From: Bigelowiella natans CCMP2755
Lineage: Eukaryota > Protista > Cercozoa
DNA: 64,000 bases
Direction: 5' to 3'
Assembly: GCA_000320545.1 (NCBI GenBank)
Contig: ADNK01000824.1
Coordinates: forward strand, 62,001 to 126,000
The notes beneath the pieces were generated by a model that saw only the letters and a list, made by a program, of their open reading frames with translations, made no database searches and was not told the DNA's origin. Position numbers and translations under genes: made by a program. Numbering within the stretch: position 1 is the stretch's first letter; each line of letters starts with the position of its first letter. Below are positions 52,825-63,423 of the stretch, piece after piece.

Positions 52825-54692
52825 ACATTATCTTTGCCTCCTTCTCCCGCCCCTCACCCTCCTCCTATGTCACCGCATACATACCGATGGTTGTCCCAGT
52901 CGAACAGCGTGTAATACTTGCGTAGTAGCACGTCGCCGAGGATGGCAAATTGTGAGTCCCCACTACTACTCAACCCTTTGTTCGAGGTCACACACACACA
53001 CAACACACGCCATAGATTACAGCATAAATAAATGATGATTAAGATAGAATGAAGCAACGTCGTGGGACGAACGTGAGCGATTCTCTCCTGCTCCCCCCTC
53101 CACCCCCGCCTCTCATCCTCTTCTTTGTCCTCTTTTTCTTCATCATCCTCTGTTTTCCGTTCAAAAATCACGACCGACCCATTTGGTAAATGCCTTGATT
53201 CGGGGGGAGGAAGTACTCGCTGCCGCTAAGCGTCAGCACAGTATCGTTGCCCGGCGAAAAGGACTTCATTTTCCAAAAGCACATGTTCAGAATTGAATAG
53301 CACGGAATAATAGGGAGGGGGGAAAGAAGGAAATGTGATGGAAAAGTACGAGTAGATGGAACCAATAAAGAATGGATGTGTCTCTTTTTCTTCTTCTTCT
53401 TCTTCTTTTTCTTCTTCGTGTGTCATCAGCAGTATCAGCAGCAGCAGCAGCAGCAGCAGTTGTTGCAGTAGTTGTTGTATGCATACTGCTGGTCGTACCG
53501 AGGGAAAACGCACTTTGAGAACGGGAAATGCATCTAAGTTTGTGCTTCTAGGGCAAACAAAGTAACTTGTGGTCGCCTCACAAGCGCTCGCAGCTGGTAA
53601 ATCAATCAATGCCTACCGATTCATTGAGGAGGAGGATGAGGAGGAAAGGCGACGGCAAAATGGCGATTTCGGGAAGACGAGAAGAGAAGGAAAAGGGGGG
53701 GGGGGGGGGGGGGGGGAAGGGAATAACGAGAAAGGAAAAAGACCATGAGGATGCAAAACAACCAACCAGAGCAGAGCAAAAGTTGGCATTTTGGTTTAGG
53801 TAATAACATATGCACGGCAATTTATTTGTTGGCAACAACTTGGCTTTTGTCCCAACGAAATGAACGCATGAACACATGCGCATCTCATGCTAAGGAAGAT
53901 TTTGTGCATTTCATCCTCCTCCTCCAGTTATTTATTATACCTGGAACACGGCGATCAAAGCGTTTGGGGGTAGGGCAATGAGAGAGGTGCCGGAGTCGAC
54001 GATGGTGGTGAGCCCGCTGCCAGATATGGTTGCGCCAAGCGTAAACTGCGACATCGCTACTGTCCAGTATCTGAGTACCAGCAACAGCAGCAGCGGCAGT
54101 ATATTTCATGACCAAGAATTTATTTAATGATCACGAGCCTCGCGTCATCATCACCATCATCATCATTCATCATCAGTGTCAGTCATCACGTCTTCACACT
54201 TACGCGAAGGCAGTGCCCGACTGTAGATTTGTCTGAATCACGTCGGTGTATTCCACGGTCGTGTTTCTGCCAAACAATACATCAATTTAGTGCGGTCGGG
54301 GAGGGGGGGGTATTGACTACGAACTGCTGTCCATATGTATTACCCAAGGAGTTCCTCTGCGAATCTAAATGGAAAGAAACCAGGGAGCGGGAGGGAGGGG
54401 CGAGGCACAGAAATGAAGCAAAAGTAGATCAGAATACAGTACCAAACCACAACTTAACATGCAAAAAAAGAAATCGGTGCTGGGAGACGAGAGGGTTGGT
54501 TGTTGCGTATTCTCAGGGCTAGTTGTTTATGACGTCTTTATCACTATCGTGTACTAACCCTCCAAAAGTAATTTGTGATCCAGGAGCATTAGTCGTCATG
54601 TAGAAAGCATAGGAGTTGGGAAGACCAGCCTAATTCATCATCGATTGTCGATGGTGATGATGATGAGGAGGATGGTGGTTGAAATGGGCTTG

Positions 54693-56009: not shown

Positions 56010-57066
56010 CACACACACGCACACATAGGACAGAGAGCGGGAGAGGGGAACAGAATGTCATCTCACAACTGCCCGTGCGTCGGCCATACGAGAAGAGTAT
56101 CTTATGATACAAACCACTACTCACGCACCACATCCACTGCATGCTGTAGATTCGGTAACTGAGGAAGTCTGATGTTAAGGATGTGTTAGCTAAATGAAAA
56201 GAAGAAGAAGAAGAAGAAGAAGAAGAAGATACGAAACTATGGGCTATTCAGATAGGATTAGTATATTAGTAAAATGAAACATACGATTTGGAAGCGTGCG
56301 GTGCCGCTACACGGGGAGCATCCTACGCCTAAGTAATGCGATGAGAGGACGTAGTTTGTCATTCTTCAGAACTACCCAAAAGAAGCAAGAACTGCATCGA
56401 GATGGCAGTTTCGATCCCGCCCAGTTCAATTTCTTACTCTCCCCCTTATTCCTATACTTCAAAACAAACCTGTAATCCAAAGGTCCGAGGATCCAGTATC
56501 CATTACGACACTTAGATTCTTTTTGAATCGATGGAAACGAGGGGGTCAAGACCAGAAAGTGCGACAACAATAGCAAAAATTCACTCTTCCAGGGCATGAT
56601 GGTAAAATATACCTGGGGTGGTGTACCAATGCCTACGACTGCGAGATATTCCAGGTTCTAAAAGATAAGAATTAGGCCCTTGAAATCTGATCTCCGTTCC
56701 AATTTTGTAGACATGCATTCATTCTTCGTGCTGTAATACTCTACCCTTAGTGACATTCATTGATTCGAGCATTTTCGAGGCAGTGGGTGCCTCATCCCAT
56801 CTCGATCAGTTTTAATGGGTGGCTAAATGTTTACTGAAATGAATCACTACGTTCAAATTCTCCAGTGGTAAGATATGCAGATCGAGCAGCTCGGCATTGT
56901 GCCCCTTCGACAGCAGCGTCCCGAACCTTAGCTTTGTCTTCTCTCGGGAGGGGGACGCTTCCCGTCGCGTAACGGGAACTCGAATCACGCCGTTCGTGTT
57001 GAGAGGTACCAGAAGGAGTAGAATAAAGAGCCTCACTGATGAGGCCAGATGGAGAAAGATACCCAT
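52298..57066 (-). CDS. Pepsin-like aspartic protease (A1) with signal peptide, propeptide and C-terminal membrane anchor
   Basis: MGIFLHLASSVRLFILLLLVPL signal, VIRVPVTRR, LEYLAVVGIGTPP, VVMDTGSSDLWI (first Asp), GIFGLAFP, IVDSGTSLIAL (second Asp), AILGDVLLRKYYTLFD, TM IFVGILGAFVV. Confidence 0.92.
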
Positions 57067-57799
57067 GACTAACGAATTGGGAACAAATCAAGAACGAGGA
57101 GCCAGGCAGGGTCGGAGGTAAATCTTCGGATGCTGAACCGATTTCCCGAGATTTCCCTTCTCGATTTCATGTCGCAGGAGCAAAAACCTATGCATATTTT
57201 CCAATGCTGATCGTTCCGACCGCCATGATTCCGCGAAATCCAGGACGAAAACAAGTTGAGCCAACGATGCAACCGCTAATTTCCTAGATTTCCTCGATTT
57301 GCATGCGCATTATTTTTCACAAGTGAAGAGAACAGATCTGATAATCTCTAGAGAGTCTCGGTGCAGTCAGGAGCATGCCTCGGAAAGCCCTCCTGTAACG
57401 ACCTGTAACGCTCTTCATTCCGAGACTCAAAGCTGAAATCCCGATGCGGTTTCTCATTCGAGCAGCAAGCTACATGTATCGTGGAGAGCGCCGGCGATGT
57501 CCCACAGCGACATGTCCTCGCAGAGTTTCCGTTTGTTTTTTTCGCACTTTTCCAGAGCTCTTCCGCTTACATGTTCTACTGTTCTCTTGGTTTTAGAAGC
57601 TGTAGTCGCAATTTGATAAATGTTCCGTGGAGAATCCGTGCATCGAGTTATCAATTTCAGCACCCAAATTGACTACTTTCCGTTAGATTCGCTTGCAGTA
57701 CGAACAAGATTGCCTGTATTTACGTAGAATCTACTTGTAGTGCGCTCACACTCGCCACAACAGATCCACTCCCTCGTTTATCTGCAACAACAACTTAAA

Positions 57800-59109
57800 A
57801 TGGGTTGCGGCGCAAGCAAAGTTCCAAATCCACACGGCAAGCATCCCAAAAAGGATGATGGATCGGAAAAGAAACCCAACAGGAAGCGCTACTTGAGACT
57901 TACCTATCGCTCCATGGTTGAATCAACACTGCTCCGTGCGAGCTACTGTTCCTTGCCTTATTAGACAGCTTGTTCGTCAATAATACGTCTTTTGTTCTTC
58001 GTCCTCTTAGCTCCGTCGTAACGTTGGAATAGACGATATCATCCGCAAAGCGAACATGAAGAACGATAGGCTTGATATTGCTGGAGCCCTCTGGTACTCG
58101 ATACTTCACGAGAGGATAAAGAGAATCCATTACACAAAAATATACATAACCTATACGCTAGATTTCTTGGGCATTGATTCGCTCCCCCACACAACCACGT
58201 CTATTGACGATGTGGTGCCTGTCCAATAGGTACAATGAGGAGGAAAACTCGGTTCGACAAATTCTGGAGGGCGAGCGAGATGCCGTGCGGAAGCTCTTCA
58301 ACAGTAATGTTAACCTCCACAAACACTGACTCGCACATTATGCACACAAGATCTACAAGAGAACTGCATCCACTGATACTTGGGAATTATAAACCACATG
58401 CATGAATGTTATCGTGTAAGCCATTTGCATGATAGTTGCGCAACACGTGCTCACGGCCTGTGTGTCCTTTGCTTTGAATGTTCAGCCATCTCTAAAGATC
58501 CAAGGCACTACGATATCGTTGTCGAAATTGAAGAGTAAGTAACCCGAGCAAGTCCGTTTGATCATCATTATCACTATCGTCACCGCCACCATCATCAACA
58601 CAATTTGATGGAGAGGTATTTACTCCACCCCCCATTAGGTATCCGTTGCGCCGGGCATATAAGAAGTGGGGGGGCATGGCCTTTTCAGAGTCACCGGACT
58701 TTAATGATAAAAACAAGACTCTGGGTGCTGATTTGTGCAAAGTCACCGCCCAGTAAGTTGGTGGATGCCGTTGTCACTTTACTGCAATTCCAAACTACTT
58801 ATATGGGTTGCTTATTCTCTATCTCCCTCTCTCTGCGCGTCTAGGTGTATGTGTGTATGTGTGTGTGTGTGTGTGTGTCCCACCGTTCAACACTTGAATT
58901 GCTGTATTGCTCTGTATTGCATAGGTACAAGGTGTCTCCGAAACAGCTCAAGGAATACCTGGACAATGTACTGGATGACGAGGACTATATCGATATTGGC
59001 AGGGTCTTTTACTGCCGCAATGAAGTAAGAAGTACGCATGTATTTATTTCTCATGTCGATGCATAGTCGTAATGAATACATGGGTTTGGTTAACAATAAT
59101 CAAATATAA

Positions 59110-59176
<67 letters not shown>

Positions 59177-59854
59177 GTGTGTACGTGATGCTGCCACAAG
59201 TATGCTTCTTCGCTACTACTACTACTACTACTATTGCTACTGCTACTACTGCTGCTGCTGCTGCTGCTGCTGGTGGTGGTGGTTCTACTTCTGATTTGTG
59301 TGCTTTGGACAACATCTTTATTATAAGACTGGAGAGGTTTTGGAGCGTCTCGAAGGGGATCGTGCAACTGTCGAGTAATAAGGAACATCCCATTGGCGTT
59401 TTTACCGTTTTTATCGTCGTTGTTGCAAAATATGGAAACTAGTCGAATAGTTTGGTGATCTGTGGAAAGGCATCTTTGATTTTTCCTTCCCCCTCTTCCT
59501 CATCAATGGGAAAGCAGTGGTGAAATTAATGTGGGGTGGGCTCGGGGAGAGACTGCTGCTTTATGAAATCTGTAGCTCGTGAAGCTAGGTCGTCACTAGC
59601 TCTGCGATTAGCCAGTCCAGGGAACCAAAACCCTCGACGTAGTTCCGCTCTATCCAAATGCATAGCTTGGGGAATTCAGTGTTGTAATTGTTTTGAAGGT
59701 ATTTGTTGCGTACGTATGAGACTGATCACTGGATTAAAAAACCAAGCTGGGGTGAATTCGAACAGGTGTGAAATCACTTATTTGCTTATCATATCTTTGA
59801 GCGCGCGTGAGCATACACAAACACACGCGCGCGCGCGCGCGCACGTACGCTTAG

Positions 59855-59901
<47 letters not shown>

Positions 59902-60917
59902 GACGTACAAATACTAACTGAAATGGTGTTACAAGCTCTGGCCTTCCTCCTCCTTTTCCTTGCGATTGTGTGTACTGAACAGGTCCAGAAAAGAGACTTC
60001 CACGTTTTCTCCACAAAGGATATTGCTCGTTTCGCCTCCTCCGACGACAGTGTAAAGCGAATTAAGGTACATTGGTCAGCTTAACAGAAAAGACAACACA
60101 GCAGCTCTTTCTCTTCTCCCCCCCCCACCCCCCCTCTCTCTAATGGAAATATGTTCTTGCCCACTCCAAGCCCCTGTAATTCATCGCAACTTTCAATGTG
60201 TTTCCCCCTGGTGTTCTCCGCTTCTACTGATAGTTCAATGTAGGGTACGCTCACAAGTTCCAGGCGTCTATGTACAATGGCTTTGACATTGCGACAGGAG
60301 CTATTCAGGCGGTAGTTGTAGTAGTAATAGATATTCGCGTACATGCGAGTGTGTGTGTGTGTGTGTGTGCTGTGTATGTGTGGCTTCCTGCTCTTACAGG
60401 CCTCTGCCTTCACTAGGTCGTTATGTTCCGAGAAGTAACGTCGGCGAAACATGTGGTTGATTCGACTGGTTCTGAGACAGACCTAACCCTCTTTCAGCTC
60501 GAAGAGGCGGTATGCATTTATGTAATATCATTATTTGTTCCCCACCGTGCTGCTACTGCTGCTGCTGCTGCTGTGCTCTGAGTGTCGTCAGATTGTCACC
60601 CTGAAAAGATATATGAGGATGGACGAGCGCTTACATAACCGAGCTATGTGTATTACTCGTATACGGATGCGATCATGCAGGAATACACACATACGCACGC
60701 ACATACTCGCGCGCACATTCGTATCTGTTTATGATACGCCTCATCAACGTTTCGTCTCCGTCGTCTCTGTCATTATGCGAATAATGCTGCATGTAGTGCC
60801 TGAACTCCATCCGGGCAACCCCTCAAGTCAACAATACTGCGGATAGTAAGAGGCAGCTTACCAGCGAGGTGGATACTTACTTACCGCTGCGGCCTGTATT
60901 CCTACTCTGCAATTTAA

Positions 60918-60953
<36 letters not shown>

Positions 60954-60966
60954 TAAAAAAAAAAAC

Positions 60967-61008
<42 letters not shown>

Positions 61009-61224
61009 CTAAATAAATTATATTGATGATATCGATGTAAATATAATTCTTGCAATAACTTGCTATCAGTAATATTACTACTCATCCCCCTCCTTCTGGC
61101 TTTACATTAGGCTTCCAAGAAGATGATCAAGGAGATTCCGGGAATTACGCTAGACTACGTAACACTGCTGTGCTTTTCCTTTTCCGTATCTTTTCCTTCT
61201 CTCCTCTCTTTCTTCCTCTCCCCC

Positions 61225-61264
<40 letters not shown>

Positions 61265-61300
61265 ATTTGCTCATTTACATTATAGGTACAAACAATAAAA

Positions 61301-61353
<53 letters not shown>

Positions 61354-62572
61354 GTGTGTGTGACGATAAAATGATGAGAGACCAATAGAACGTCCGATTT
61401 GGCCTTTTTGCGATTGCAGTGAAGGATAATTGTACAGCATGCAAGCGAGGGCGCAAAACTAAATTAAACGCATATTATCTACTCACACAAAAACGTCAAA
61501 CAGACTGTCATGCACCCTCCTCTCGGATTTACTGTGCGAAGAAACAAGATCTTTCAAGACGCCAAACAGGATGGTGATGAAAAGGTACTACTACCTCGAC
61601 AACCGCTTCCTCCTGCATTTATCGTATATCGCTGCTGTAGAAGGAAGAGTGATAGGACATGGTTTATGTCTCTATATATCAACATCACTATTAAGTGACA
61701 TATGCATGCTTTCATTGTGCAGACTGTGAAGATTCCGAAAGCGATAGTGATCCCAACCTCGAATACCGGTTAACCTCCTATGATGCCTGTTACATATATA
61801 CTGAATTATATATGTTCGCGTGTGCGTGCAGCATGTATAGTGGCGATCAGATATTTTCCACGCTGTACTTTCCGGACAGCCATCGATGCCTTTGTTCCGT
61901 GTTGTGCATCTCTCTGAATGGGAGAAAGGAAGAAATGGGTTGGGGGGGTCACGGAAGTGGGAAAATGCTAGCCGAATACAACTCGCATCAATACATAACA
62001 TATTCTACTGGCTCGCACTCAGAAATACGCAAACTCGTTGAGGGCAAGCAGTGCTCCCTCATCTGTATCAACGACGTCAATGTGGCTTACGAGACCTCAG
62101 CAAATATTTCAAAGGTCTCGATCACTACAATACGCACACATTTAGGACAGTATGCGTAACCGATGTGACATTCCTCGTTCGCTGCAAATACTTATCCACT
62201 GCTGCTGCAACAGTCGCGGTAGCGATTGCATCATGAAGCTTACTTTCTAGCTTTGAGAAAATGCATCTGTCCATCATCATCGTGGTTAACTGCAGCATTG
62301 CTTTGCCAACTGTAGATGCTTCGGAAGGCCTGCGAGAAGTTTCCTGTGCATCTCAAGATCAATCTCAGGTCGCATCTTTTGAAGATATCATGTCACGTGT
62401 GATAAGTACAGGTTTTGGCTGTGGAATAATAATTACAATGACACTGAGGGTTGCGGCTATTGAGTGTTAATGATATTATCGTCAAGGAATCTGTGTGAGA
62501 TTCTTACGTATCTCCATAAGTAATTTGTTGTTTAACAGAAAGGAGGAGTCAAAAGCCGAGGTGAAGAAATAA
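57800..62572 (+). CDS. N-acylated BLUF-domain photoreceptor with a second, degenerate BLUF repeat; 3' exons uncertain
   Basis: MGCGASK start. Spliced YLRLTYRSM|LRRNVGIDDIIRKANMKNDRLDIAGALW|YNEEENSVRQILEGERDAVRKLFN|TISKDPRHYDIVVEIE|EYPLRRAYKKWGGMAF carries the BLUF Tyr, Asn, Gln, DxRH, Trp and Met. Confidence 0.88.
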
Positions 62573-63423
62573 CTTATCTGAGTGTCACCTTCAAAGAAAT
62601 TTCTCATCGTGGCCAACGTTGAAACAAAAGACGGCATGTCTGCAGCAGAGAATCGGAGAGTCTAATGATTCGCGTCCTCATGGATATCTAGAAGGCTGCA
62701 AGCGTTTACTGAACATTTTAGAATTCTTCTTCTGTTCTATCTCCTAGCTTGCGACGATTCATCCAATCTGTTTAGTTTCTTCGTTGTAGTTTTGCAAATT
62801 AATCATGTGTCCACTTCCATCCTCTTCACTATGTCCTGTAACAAAACGCATTGTTGTATGACATGCATTAACAGCAATGGTTGCTATATATCAAGCGAGT
62901 AGCGGCGTGATATTAGCTAGATAGCTAGGACATAAATAGCCTATACGCAAGGTGATCGTATTGGCCGTGTTCCCTTGCGCTTTAATCATTTAGTTATTTA
63001 ATATGATGTAGAATTAATAGCTGGCACCACCATGATATATGGCATGCGCAATTCGAGACGGAGGCAATGGCAAATAATACATTATTACTTTTTATTAACA
63101 ATCGCTCTTGAGCATCTATGCGCACTATTCATTGTCCTGTATCATTTGCAGAAGATATCCGAAATAATGTACGATATAGGTACCATACGTTTTGCGCCGT
63201 ACAACTACTGCCAAATAATACGCAGCGCAATAATGATTCACGATAGTTAATGTGGTGGAAGAAAATTGCTACATCACCAAACCAAATTTGGGAATTTAAC
63301 ACATTTATTATCGACGTGCATGTTGATCATTTGCCAATGTACTGACAACGAGCCAATTTGCATTCTTGAAGCAGCTCTGATCTGGAGCTCCCCGAGTGCA
63401 CTCTATGCAGTCTGGTATGGCAT

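What the first reader, a model, noticed from the sequence alone, without database searches (positions are those of the whole stretch)
57800..58700. Membrane-anchored BLUF blue-light receptor hidden in tiny exons
Seen: five short exons (57800-57916, 58011-58093, 58230-58303, 58486-58534, 58639 onward) rebuild a full BLUF domain. It has the equivalents of AppA Tyr21 (TYRS), Asn45, Gln63 (RQILEG), DPRH, Trp104 and Met106 (WGGM). The protein starts MGCGASK, a typical myristoylation plus palmitoylation motif. Known: BLUF domains are mainly bacterial; the best-known eukaryotic example is the euglenid photoactivated adenylyl cyclase. Dual acylation often targets plasma or flagellar membranes. Inference: a lipid-anchored BLUF sensor with no recognisable cyclase or EAL output, possibly an undescribed photosensory system for zoospore or amoeboid photobehaviour.
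Basis: partly seen in the sequence, partly recalled or inferred. Interest (0 to 1): 0.88.

Follow-up and report, generated by a model that had tools for sequence, protein, structure and literature searches.

The report
Lipid-anchored tandem BLUF light sensor gene
The tiny exons are real and expressed, but they are only the front of an 18-exon gene of the alga Bigelowiella natans. It encodes a probably membrane-anchored blue-light sensor with one intact and one degenerate flavin-sensor domain and an unknown tail, an architecture I found described in no paper.

Summary
The five exons exist exactly as given; the fifth ends at 58752. Transcript contigs from three studies carry all four splice joints, so the MGCGASK exon is joined to the BLUF exons.

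They are only exons 1-5 of 18 coding exons (57800-62572, + strand) of one 443-residue protein. It differs by one residue from an MMETSP transcript ORF (P0006). It corresponds to JGI model Bigna1 86950 of Bigelowiella natans. Orthologues exist in Lotharella globosa and Amorphochlora amoebiformis.

- **BLUF1 (residues 33-118):** canonical BLUF (Pfam 63.8 bits, 22 solved BLUF structures matched). Tyr36, Asn57, Gln77, Trp118 and Met121 are invariant, with an unusual W-G-G-M spacing.
- **BLUF2 (residues ~140-227):** a degenerate second BLUF (hhalign 92.7%) with Gln to Glu, Asn to Glu and no Met.
- **Tail (~200 residues):** conserved, no recognisable family. A PDZ-like lead was not confirmed.
- **Anchor:** MGCG is invariant in the three genera, and the genome encodes NMT and DHHC enzymes.

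Best reading: a lipid-anchored, non-enzymatic BLUF/pseudo-BLUF sensor that signals through protein contacts. The gene models are already public and machine-annotated, but I found no paper on them. The scan also noted other BLUF genes elsewhere in this genome.

The parts
57759..57799 (+). 5' UTR as far as the transcript contigs reach. It has no ATG, and the start context is AAAATGG.
   Evidence: Contigs of X1, X2 and X9 begin at 57758/57759; sequence read.
57800..57916 (+). Exon 1, residues 1-39. It carries MGCGASK (Gly2 myristoylation, Cys3 palmitoylation motif), a basic disordered linker, and BLUF strand beta1 with Tyr36 (57905-57907).
58011..58093 (+). Exon 2, residues 40-67 (part). BLUF helix alpha1 and strand beta2; Asn57 at 58062-58064.
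58230..58303 (+). Exon 3, residues 67-92 (part). BLUF strand beta3 and helix alpha2; Gln77 at 58258-58260 (RQILEG).
58486..58534 (+). Exon 4, residues 92-108 (part). DPRH motif and strand beta4.
58639..58752 (+). Exon 5, residues 108-146 (part). Strand beta5 with Trp118 (58667-58669) and Met121 (58676-58678) in W-G-G-M, then the linker into BLUF2.
58925..59024 (+). Exon 6, residues 146-179. Start of the degenerate second BLUF; Tyr147 (58926-58928); Glu165 (58980-58982) sits where BLUF1 has Asn57.
   Evidence: Loose ends of the contigs run into this exon.
59328..59374 (+). Exon 7, residues 180-195 (part). BLUF2 strand beta3 with Glu185 (59343-59345) in place of the photoactive Gln. The TAA just behind it lies in the intron donor (GA|GTAATA).
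59699..59765 (+). Exon 8, residues 195-217. BLUF2 helix alpha2 and the DHW motif.
59983..60066 (+). Exon 9, residues 218-245. End of BLUF2 (FHVFS) and start of the C-terminal region.
60234..60311 (+). Exon 10, residues 246-271.
60417..60509 (+). Exon 11, residues 272-302.
60797..60868 (+). Exon 12, residues 303-326.
61111..61158 (+). Exon 13, residues 327-342. Residue 329 is Lys in the window but Glu in the MMETSP transcript.
61504..61584 (+). Exon 14, residues 343-369. Carries the conserved HPPLGF motif.
61723..61768 (+). Exon 15, residues 370-385 (part).
62023..62114 (+). Exon 16, residues 385-415. Carries the conserved INDVNV motif.
62316..62368 (+). Exon 17, residues 416-433 (part).
62539..62572 (+). 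Exon 18, residues 433-443, plus the stop codon (62570-62572).
57896..58669 (+). BLUF1 domain span (residues 33-118, introns included). Canonical BLUF.
   Evidence: Pfam PF04940, 63.8 bits, E 1.6e-17; 22 solved BLUF structures matched by sequence; Foldseek rmsd 1.2-2.1 A to AppA, BlrB and PixD.
58733..60012 (+). BLUF2 span (residues ~140-227, introns included). Degenerate pseudo-BLUF.
   Evidence: [quoted passage not shown]
60037..62569 (+). C-terminal region (residues 236-443, introns included). Conserved in three genera; family unknown.

Best explanation
This is one expressed 18-exon gene (57800-62572, + strand) of the chlorarachniophyte Bigelowiella natans. It encodes a 443-residue blue-light sensor candidate.

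What is shown:
- The exon structure.
- A canonical BLUF domain (residues 33-118) with the complete Tyr36/Asn57/Gln77/Trp118/Met121 set.
- A tandem second BLUF-derived domain (~140-227) that has lost Gln (Glu185), Asn (Glu165) and Met.
- A conserved ~200-residue tail of no known family.
- An N-terminal MGCG motif that is invariant in three genera.

What is inferred:
- Gly2 is myristoylated and Cys3 palmitoylated. Together with the basic linker, this holds the protein on the cytosolic face of a membrane.
- BLUF1 binds flavin and runs the usual hydrogen-bond-switch photocycle.
- The change at strand beta5 is passed to the adjoining pseudo-BLUF, which acts as a built-in partner in place of the usual BLUF dimer mate. 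From there it reaches the C-terminal region, which changes its binding to one or more unknown membrane-side partners.
- The protein would therefore be a non-enzymatic sensor of the PixD/AppA/BlsA type of logic, but tethered to a membrane.
For: Gene structure and expression:
- Splice joints 1-4 and the transcript start appear in contigs of three studies.
- The whole ORF maps onto the window with GT..AG introns and one residue difference.

BLUF1:
- Pfam BLUF 63.8 bits for residues 1-135.
- BlrP1 and BlrB match at E 4e-9, and AppA, PixD, TePixD, BlsA, bPAC and OaPAC also match.
- The AF2 model has BLUF topology, and Foldseek gives rmsd 1.2-2.1 A to solved BLUFs.

Conservation:
- Key residues and MGCG are invariant in Bigelowiella, Lotharella and Amorphochlora.

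BLUF2:
- Homology to BLUF by hhalign, 92.7%.

No enzymatic output:
- No enzyme domain was found.

Acylation:
- The genome has NMT and many DHHC loci.
- The N-terminal 29 residues are predicted disordered and basic.
- The motif fits the PROSITE PS00008 pattern G-{EDRKHPFYW}-x(2)-[STAGCN]-{P}. This rests on established knowledge and was checked by eye.
Against: - No flavin binding, photocycle, acylation or localisation has been measured.
- The W-G-G-M spacing differs from the usual W-x-M, and AF2 gives low confidence for the beta5 region (110-137). The Trp/Met switch may therefore work differently or not at all.
- In Amorphochlora both the transcript ORF and the genome model start 16 residues upstream of MGCG. 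If that AUG is used there, Gly is not N-terminal.
- The basic cluster behind the motif is not well conserved.
- The fold and partners of the output region are unknown.
- Contact between BLUF1 and BLUF2 is untested.
Confidence: 0.6

Rival explanations
1. One reading: a short stand-alone BLUF protein of five to seven exons (about 150-200 residues), ending soon after the BLUF core, with no further domains.
For: Read naively, the frame of exon 7 runs into TAA at 59376. Two of the three contigs laid are short (628 and 948 bases).
Against: The TAA lies in the donor of intron 7 (GA|GTAATA). The complete MMETSP ORF P0006 and the JGI model continue through 11 more exons that map onto the window. The Lotharella and Amorphochlora orthologues have the same 428-451 residue architecture. 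The X9 contig is 1573 bases long, which fits a 443-residue ORF.
Confidence: 0.03
2. The protein has the BLUF fold but is not a light sensor. BLUF1 would be a dark flavin- or redox-binding module, or a purely structural one, because the extra glycine in W-G-G-M disables the Met/Trp switch.
For: W-G-G-M is found in all three orthologues, whereas the paralogue L001 and the solved BLUFs aligned here have W-x-M. The beta5 region is poorly modelled. A fungal BLUF-like protein with a conserved Tyr-Gln-Met set showed atypical spectra (bioRxiv 10.64898/2026.08.14.744829).
Against: Every residue of the photochemical core (Tyr, Asn, Gln, Met, Trp, DPRH) has stayed invariant across three genera, while BLUF2 in the same protein lost them. 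This argues for selection on photochemistry in BLUF1.
Confidence: 0.15
3. The protein is soluble and cytosolic. The MGCG start is not acylated, or acylation is only transient, and signalling does not take place at a membrane.
For: Acylation is predicted from a motif only. The Amorphochlora models begin upstream of MGCG. A 2025 review describes all flavin photoreceptors of algae as soluble (PMC12558739).
Against: MGCG followed by [AS][ST][KR] is invariant in three genera, while the next ~25 residues diverge freely. It is the first AUG of the Bigelowiella transcript. The enzymes are encoded. At least one other BLUF locus in the genome, L006, also has an MG..C start just upstream of its BLUF exon.
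Confidence: 0.15
4. Both BLUF units bind flavin. BLUF2, with Glu in place of the Gln, is a permanently 'lit-like' reference domain against which BLUF1 switches, rather than an empty scaffold.
For: BLUF2 keeps the beta1 Tyr (Tyr147, invariant) and the fold. [quoted passage not shown] 2010, Biochemistry 49:10682, as cited in PMC3760249; spectra quoted).
Against: BLUF2 also replaces the flavin-contacting Asn by Glu and has lost Met, Trp and DPRH. It scores only 15.5 bits against Pfam BLUF.
Confidence: 0.1

Closest known systems
Short (group II) bacterial BLUF proteins: PixD/Slr1694, TePixD, BlrB, BlsA
   Same: They have the same BLUF core and key residues. They match by sequence (E 4.5e-9 to 2e-4) and by fold (rmsd 1.2-2.1 A). 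They have no enzyme domain, and their output goes through protein-protein contacts (established knowledge).
   Different: Those proteins have about 140-160 residues, are soluble and bacterial, and carry two C-terminal helices. This one is eukaryotic and has 443 residues. It has an N-terminal acylation motif, a tandem degenerate BLUF and a long unknown tail, with W-G-G-M instead of W-x-M.
Euglena photoactivated adenylyl cyclase (PAC alpha/beta)
   Same: It is a eukaryotic BLUF photoreceptor with two BLUF units per chain, working at a flagellum-associated structure (PMC2781859).
   Different: In PAC the BLUFs alternate with class III cyclase domains. Here the two BLUF units are adjacent, there is no cyclase, and the second BLUF lacks the photoactive Gln.
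AppA (BLUF plus SCHIC) and BlrP1/YcgF (BLUF plus EAL)
   Same: A BLUF at the N-terminus controls a C-terminal module. BlrP1 is the best solved-structure match (E 4e-9).
   Different: No SCHIC or EAL domain is detected, and the C-terminal region matches no family.
Dual-acylated membrane proteins with an MGC start (Src-family kinases Lck and Fyn, G-alpha-i, trypanosomatid calflagins and SMP-1)
   Same: They share the Met-Gly-Cys start with a small residue at position 6, often followed by basic residues. This signal drives plasma-membrane or flagellar-membrane targeting (established knowledge, recalled and not tested here).
   Different: None of them is a photoreceptor. In this gene, acylation is only predicted.
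Kinase-BLUF paralogues of chlorarachniophytes (L001 in this genome; Norrisiella P0009, 811 residues)
   Same: They come from the same lineage and share the BLUF family (31% identity in the core).
   Different: Those carry an N-terminal Ser/Thr kinase, a single BLUF with W-G-M, and no MGC start.

Membership tests
BLUF (Pfam PF04940), domain 1 (residues 33-118) | Profile score above the curated cut-off (25 bits). | tested here: met
   63.8 bits, E 1.6e-17 for P0006:1-135, covering profile positions 3-89 of 92. Single exons alone do not reach the cut-off.
BLUF (Pfam PF04940), domain 1 (residues 33-118) | [quoted passage not shown] | tested here: met
   The AF2 model has pLDDT 70-80 over residues 31-108, with beta1-alpha1-beta2-beta3-alpha2-beta4. 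Foldseek finds AppA, BlrB, PixD and TePixD at rmsd 1.2-2.1 A over ~76 residues. Strand beta5 is modelled with low confidence.
BLUF (Pfam PF04940), domain 1 (residues 33-118) | Photoactive triad: Tyr on beta1, Gln on beta3, Met on beta5. | tested here: met
   Tyr36, Gln77 and Met121 are invariant in five aligned homologues. Tyr and Gln align with those of BlrB and BlrP1. The Trp-to-Met spacing is W-G-G-M, not W-x-M.
BLUF (Pfam PF04940), domain 1 (residues 33-118) | Flavin-contacting Asn on alpha1 and the D-x-R-H motif. | tested here: met
   Asn57 and D96-P-R-H99 are conserved and align with BlrB.
BLUF (Pfam PF04940), domain 1 (residues 33-118) | Non-covalent flavin binding and a reversible ~10 nm red shift in blue light. 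| not testable with these tools
   This needs purified protein and spectroscopy.
BLUF, domain 2 (residues ~140-227) | Profile score above the cut-off, and the photoactive Gln and Met. | tested here: not met
   15.5 bits, E 0.019. Gln is replaced by Glu185 and Asn by Glu165, and no Met is present. Homology to BLUF is nevertheless supported (hhalign 92.7%, E 4e-7) and the topology is kept. It is therefore a derived pseudo-BLUF, not a working member.
Group II 'short' stand-alone BLUF proteins | About 200 residues or fewer, with a BLUF core plus a short C-terminal cap only. | tested here: not met
   The protein has 443 residues and two further conserved regions.
Photoactivated adenylyl cyclase / BLUF-EAL enzymes | A class III cyclase or EAL domain on the same chain. 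| tested here: not met
   Pfam and NCBIfam scans of the whole protein and of its parts find neither.
N-myristoylated, S-palmitoylated proteins | Gly2 after the initiator Met, a permitted residue at position 3, a small residue at position 6, no Pro at position 7, and Cys close to Gly2. | tested here: met
   The starts are MGCGASK in Bigelowiella, MGCGATK in Lotharella and MGCGSTR in Amorphochlora. This is the first AUG in the Bigelowiella transcript. The pattern was checked by eye against PROSITE PS00008 as recalled.
N-myristoylated, S-palmitoylated proteins | The modifying enzymes are present in the organism. | tested here: met
   NMT_C at 143 bits on contig C1218; at least 15 DHHC loci above the cut-off.
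N-myristoylated, S-palmitoylated proteins | The lipids are actually attached and the protein sits on a membrane. | not testable with these tools
   This needs metabolic labelling and localisation.
PDZ domain (C-terminal ~100 residues) | A significant profile or fold match to PDZ. | tested here: inconclusive
   ESM Atlas feature hits to PDZ clusters score only ~0.8, which is chance level. No Pfam PDZ hit appears at E up to 10. The exons are absent from the genome-wide PDZ scan. hhalign against 11 PDZ domains of this genome aligns in the expected register, but with probability 3% and P 0.015. The AF2 model is unusable, pLDDT 35.

The most novel reading that the evidence does not exclude
Chlorarachniophytes would own a previously undescribed class of flavin photoreceptor: a BLUF sensor fixed to the plasma or flagellar membrane by dual acylation. 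Its light signal would be read out within the molecule by a fossil second BLUF and a new C-terminal interaction module, and it would steer blue-light behaviour of the flagellate or amoeboid cell. This would be the first membrane-tethered flavin photoreceptor of algae, and a compact light-switched membrane-recruitment module for optogenetics.
Probability: 0.3. Interest if true: 0.8.

Novelty: new variant of a known kind. Interest (0 to 1): 0.55.

Why it matters
Work on eukaryotic BLUF receptors has centred on the euglenid and heterolobosean cyclases. A 2025 review of algal photoreceptors names only Euglena for BLUF and states that all flavin receptors of algae are soluble (PMC12558739).

This gene is a conserved, expressed BLUF protein in a different supergroup (Rhizaria). 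It combines a lipid anchor, a built-in pseudo-BLUF and an unknown output region. I found no paper describing that combination.

- It offers a testable entry into blue-light signalling in chlorarachniophytes. Amorphochlora is among the protists covered by a genetic-tool development study (PMC7200600, listed).
- It provides a natural experiment on what a BLUF with Gln replaced by Glu does.
- It could give a small non-enzymatic light switch that already sits at a membrane.

It also shows that six-frame profile scans miss such micro-exon genes. The genome-wide BLUF scan did not report this locus.

Tried and rejected
**How the spliced model was handled**
- Exons were sent one by one by reference.
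- Whole-protein work used the natural database protein P0006 by its id.
- A script only mapped P0006 back onto the window to obtain coordinates.
- Read laying received 1841 letters (57000-58840), chosen to stop before the microsatellites.

**Exon-by-exon searches**
- Pfam was almost blank and the solved-structure searches gave no BLUF match.

**Searches for related loci**
- With the 64-residue open frame around exon 5 it found nothing in the metagenome contigs.
- Own-genome searches with exons 1 and 5 found only the gene itself, so there is no close paralogue.

**An error of mine, corrected**
- I first read a stop at 59376 and a ~196-residue product. The orthologue P0003 and then P0006 showed this was wrong.

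**Downstream and C-terminal checks**
- A suspected further BLUF gene downstream at 62500-63400 turned out to be noise.
- The C-terminal region has no significant Pfam, NCBIfam or PDB-sequence match and no similarity to BLUF.
- The PDZ idea was not confirmed.
- The AF2 model of residues 232-443 failed, pLDDT 35.

**Other**
- Complex prediction for BLUF1 with BLUF2 was not folded by the tool, so there is no verdict.
- A MAFFT alignment of loose exon pieces to a paralogue was too messy to use.
- The raw-read RNA run X21 gave only two reads on the stretch and no information.

Full report
**Observation**

Each is bordered by GT..AG.

Reads settle whether they are joined. Assembled transcript contigs from three runs of three different studies (X1, X2, X9) lie on the stretch with four joints: 57916>58011, 58093>58230, 58303>58486 and 58534>58639. 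All three begin at 57758/57759 and run on behind exon 5 into letters that belong to an exon at 58925.

The share of sampled words held by the best runs (0.28) is what spliced exons alone would give. The known 5'UTR has no ATG, so MGCGASK is the first start codon seen.

**How the spliced model was handled**

Exon by exon, the evidence is thin:
- Only exon 3 touches Pfam BLUF (E 0.036).
- Single exons find no BLUF among solved structures.
- The genome-wide six-frame BLUF scan lists eleven other places but not this one.

The way forward was a phmmer search of the 1.8-billion representative library with exon 5 alone. It found P0003 (451 residues) and P0005 (159 residues). A word search with P0003 then found P0006, a complete 443-residue MMETSP transcript ORF.

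**The real gene**

P0006 maps back onto the window as 18 coding exons from 57800 to 62572, all GT..AG. There is one residue difference: Lys329 in the window, Glu in the transcript.

My own first reading of a stop at 59376 was wrong. That TAA sits in the donor of intron 7.

Cluster look-up names the relatives:
- P0007 is JGI model Bigna1 86950 of Bigelowiella natans and carries Lys329 as the window does. The genome is therefore almost certainly B. natans. The JGI model reads through intron 16 and has a wrong C-terminus.
- P0003 is UniProt A0A7S4DDL6 of Lotharella globosa, machine-named 'BLUF domain-containing protein'.
- P0008 is a hypothetical protein of Amorphochlora amoebiformis.

No further full-length relatives turned up, only fragments.

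**Anatomy**

1. *N-terminus, residues 1-29.* Predicted disordered. It begins MGCGASK and is basic in Bigelowiella. MGCG is invariant in the three genera while the following residues drift.
2. *BLUF1, residues 33-118.*
   - Pfam scores 63.8 bits, E 1.6e-17.
   - 22 distinct solved BLUF sequences match, led by BlrP1 and BlrB.
   - The model superposes on AppA, BlrB and PixD at 1.2-2.1 A.
   - Tyr36, Asn57, Gln77, DPRH, Trp118 and Met121 are invariant.
   - One oddity: all three orthologues have W-G-G-M, where the paralogue L001 and the solved BLUFs aligned here have W-x-M. The beta5 stretch is the poorly modelled part.
3. *BLUF2, residues ~140-227.*
   - The Pfam BLUF hit is sub-threshold (15.5 bits).
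   - Profile-profile comparison with the BLUF1 family gives 92.7%, E 4e-7 over 71 columns.
   - The photoactive Gln is Glu185, the Asn is Glu165, and Met, Trp and DPRH are gone, though the beta1 Tyr (147) is kept. It is a conserved pseudo-BLUF.
4. *C-terminal region, residues 236-443.*
   - Conserved in the three genera.
   - No family matches in Pfam, NCBIfam or the sequences of solved structures.
   - It is unrelated to BLUF and not foldable with three sequences (pLDDT 35).
   - Its last ~100 residues look PDZ-like to the eye (HPPLGF, INDVNV), and the ESM Atlas leans the same way at chance-level scores.
   - A profile of eleven PDZ domains taken from this genome aligns in the right register with only 3% probability. 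I leave this open.

The weak acylphosphatase hits reflect the fold class shared with BLUF.

**Mechanism**

What is shown is the architecture. What follows is inference from well-studied families.
- A Gly2/Cys3 start with a small residue at position 6 is the classic signal for N-myristoylation followed by palmitoylation. The genome encodes NMT and many DHHC enzymes. Together with the basic linker, this should hold the protein at the cytosolic face of a membrane.
- BLUF1 has everything needed for the flavin hydrogen-bond-switch photocycle.
- BLUF domains usually work as dimers and pass their signal from strand beta5 to whatever packs against the sheet. Here a fossil BLUF is fused directly behind, so it plausibly serves as the fixed partner and relay to the C-terminal region.
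- With no enzyme domain, output must go through changed binding of other proteins, as in PixD, AppA or BlsA.
- A natural Gln-to-Glu BLUF is interesting in itself. The AppA Q63E mutant is reported to be locked in a pseudo-lit state (Dragnea et al. 2010, cited in PMC3760249).

**Caveats**
- No biochemistry exists for this protein.
- W-G-G-M may alter the Trp/Met switch.
- The Amorphochlora models start 16 residues upstream of MGCG.

**Known or new**

The gene models are public and one is machine-annotated as a BLUF protein, so the gene is not hidden. In the held literature I found nothing on BLUF proteins of chlorarachniophytes. The two papers that hold both 'BLUF' and 'Bigelowiella' were not seen to link them: in the one I opened, Bigelowiella occurs only in the reference list. 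A 2025 review names only Euglena for algal BLUF and calls all algal flavin receptors soluble. BLUF domains are also reported in heterolobosean amoebae and fungi.

I rate this a new variant of a known kind. It is a BLUF photoreceptor candidate with an undescribed architecture (acyl anchor, BLUF, pseudo-BLUF, unknown tail), so far seen only in chlorarachniophytes.

Other notes of this scan report further BLUF genes in the same genome. I confirmed that a kinase-BLUF family exists. A second BLUF locus has an MG..C start just upstream of its BLUF exon.

**Verdict**

Interest is moderate to good at 0.55.

Noticed in passing
L001 (G000:C3421:10099-13380) and P0009: A paralogous BLUF family is fused to an N-terminal Ser/Thr kinase. 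Norrisiella sphaerica P0009 has 811 residues with a kinase followed by BLUF. The B. natans locus L001 holds the intron-free BLUF part (72.7 bits). This is a candidate light-switched kinase.
   Followed up: partly
L006:1329 onward (G000:C2067, about 24050): An open frame starting MGLMCSS lies about 170 bases upstream of another BLUF exon, in a different frame. It may be a second N-acylated BLUF protein, but the splice link was not checked.
   Followed up: partly
G000, table: At least eight further loci in the genome match BLUF. The window's own gene was missed by that six-frame scan because its exons are so small, so the count is a lower bound.
   Followed up: partly
window 62115-62315 (intron 16): The public JGI model Bigna1 86950 (P0007) reads through this intron, which gives it a wrong, non-conserved C-terminus. 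The transcript-based P0006 ending is conserved in Lotharella and Amorphochlora.
   Followed up: yes
window 61117-61119 (codon 329): The window and the JGI model have Lys, whereas the MMETSP transcript P0006 has Glu. This is probably a strain difference.
   Followed up: partly
window 58838-58880, 59100-59290, 59820-59900, 60340-60370: The introns of this gene hold long microsatellites: (GT)n, (AT)n, (CTA/GCT)n, (GC)n and (GA)n.
   Followed up: no
L015-L025 (eleven loci of G000): This is a divergent PDZ family of B. natans with a shared G-[VI]-x-x-G-W motif. Most members fall just under Pfam's PDZ cut-offs.
   Followed up: partly
window 52854-53171, minus strand: An open frame ends in a motif (ILGD..L..YY..FD) that resembles the C-terminus of pepsin-type aspartic proteases. 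No tool was run on it.
   Followed up: no
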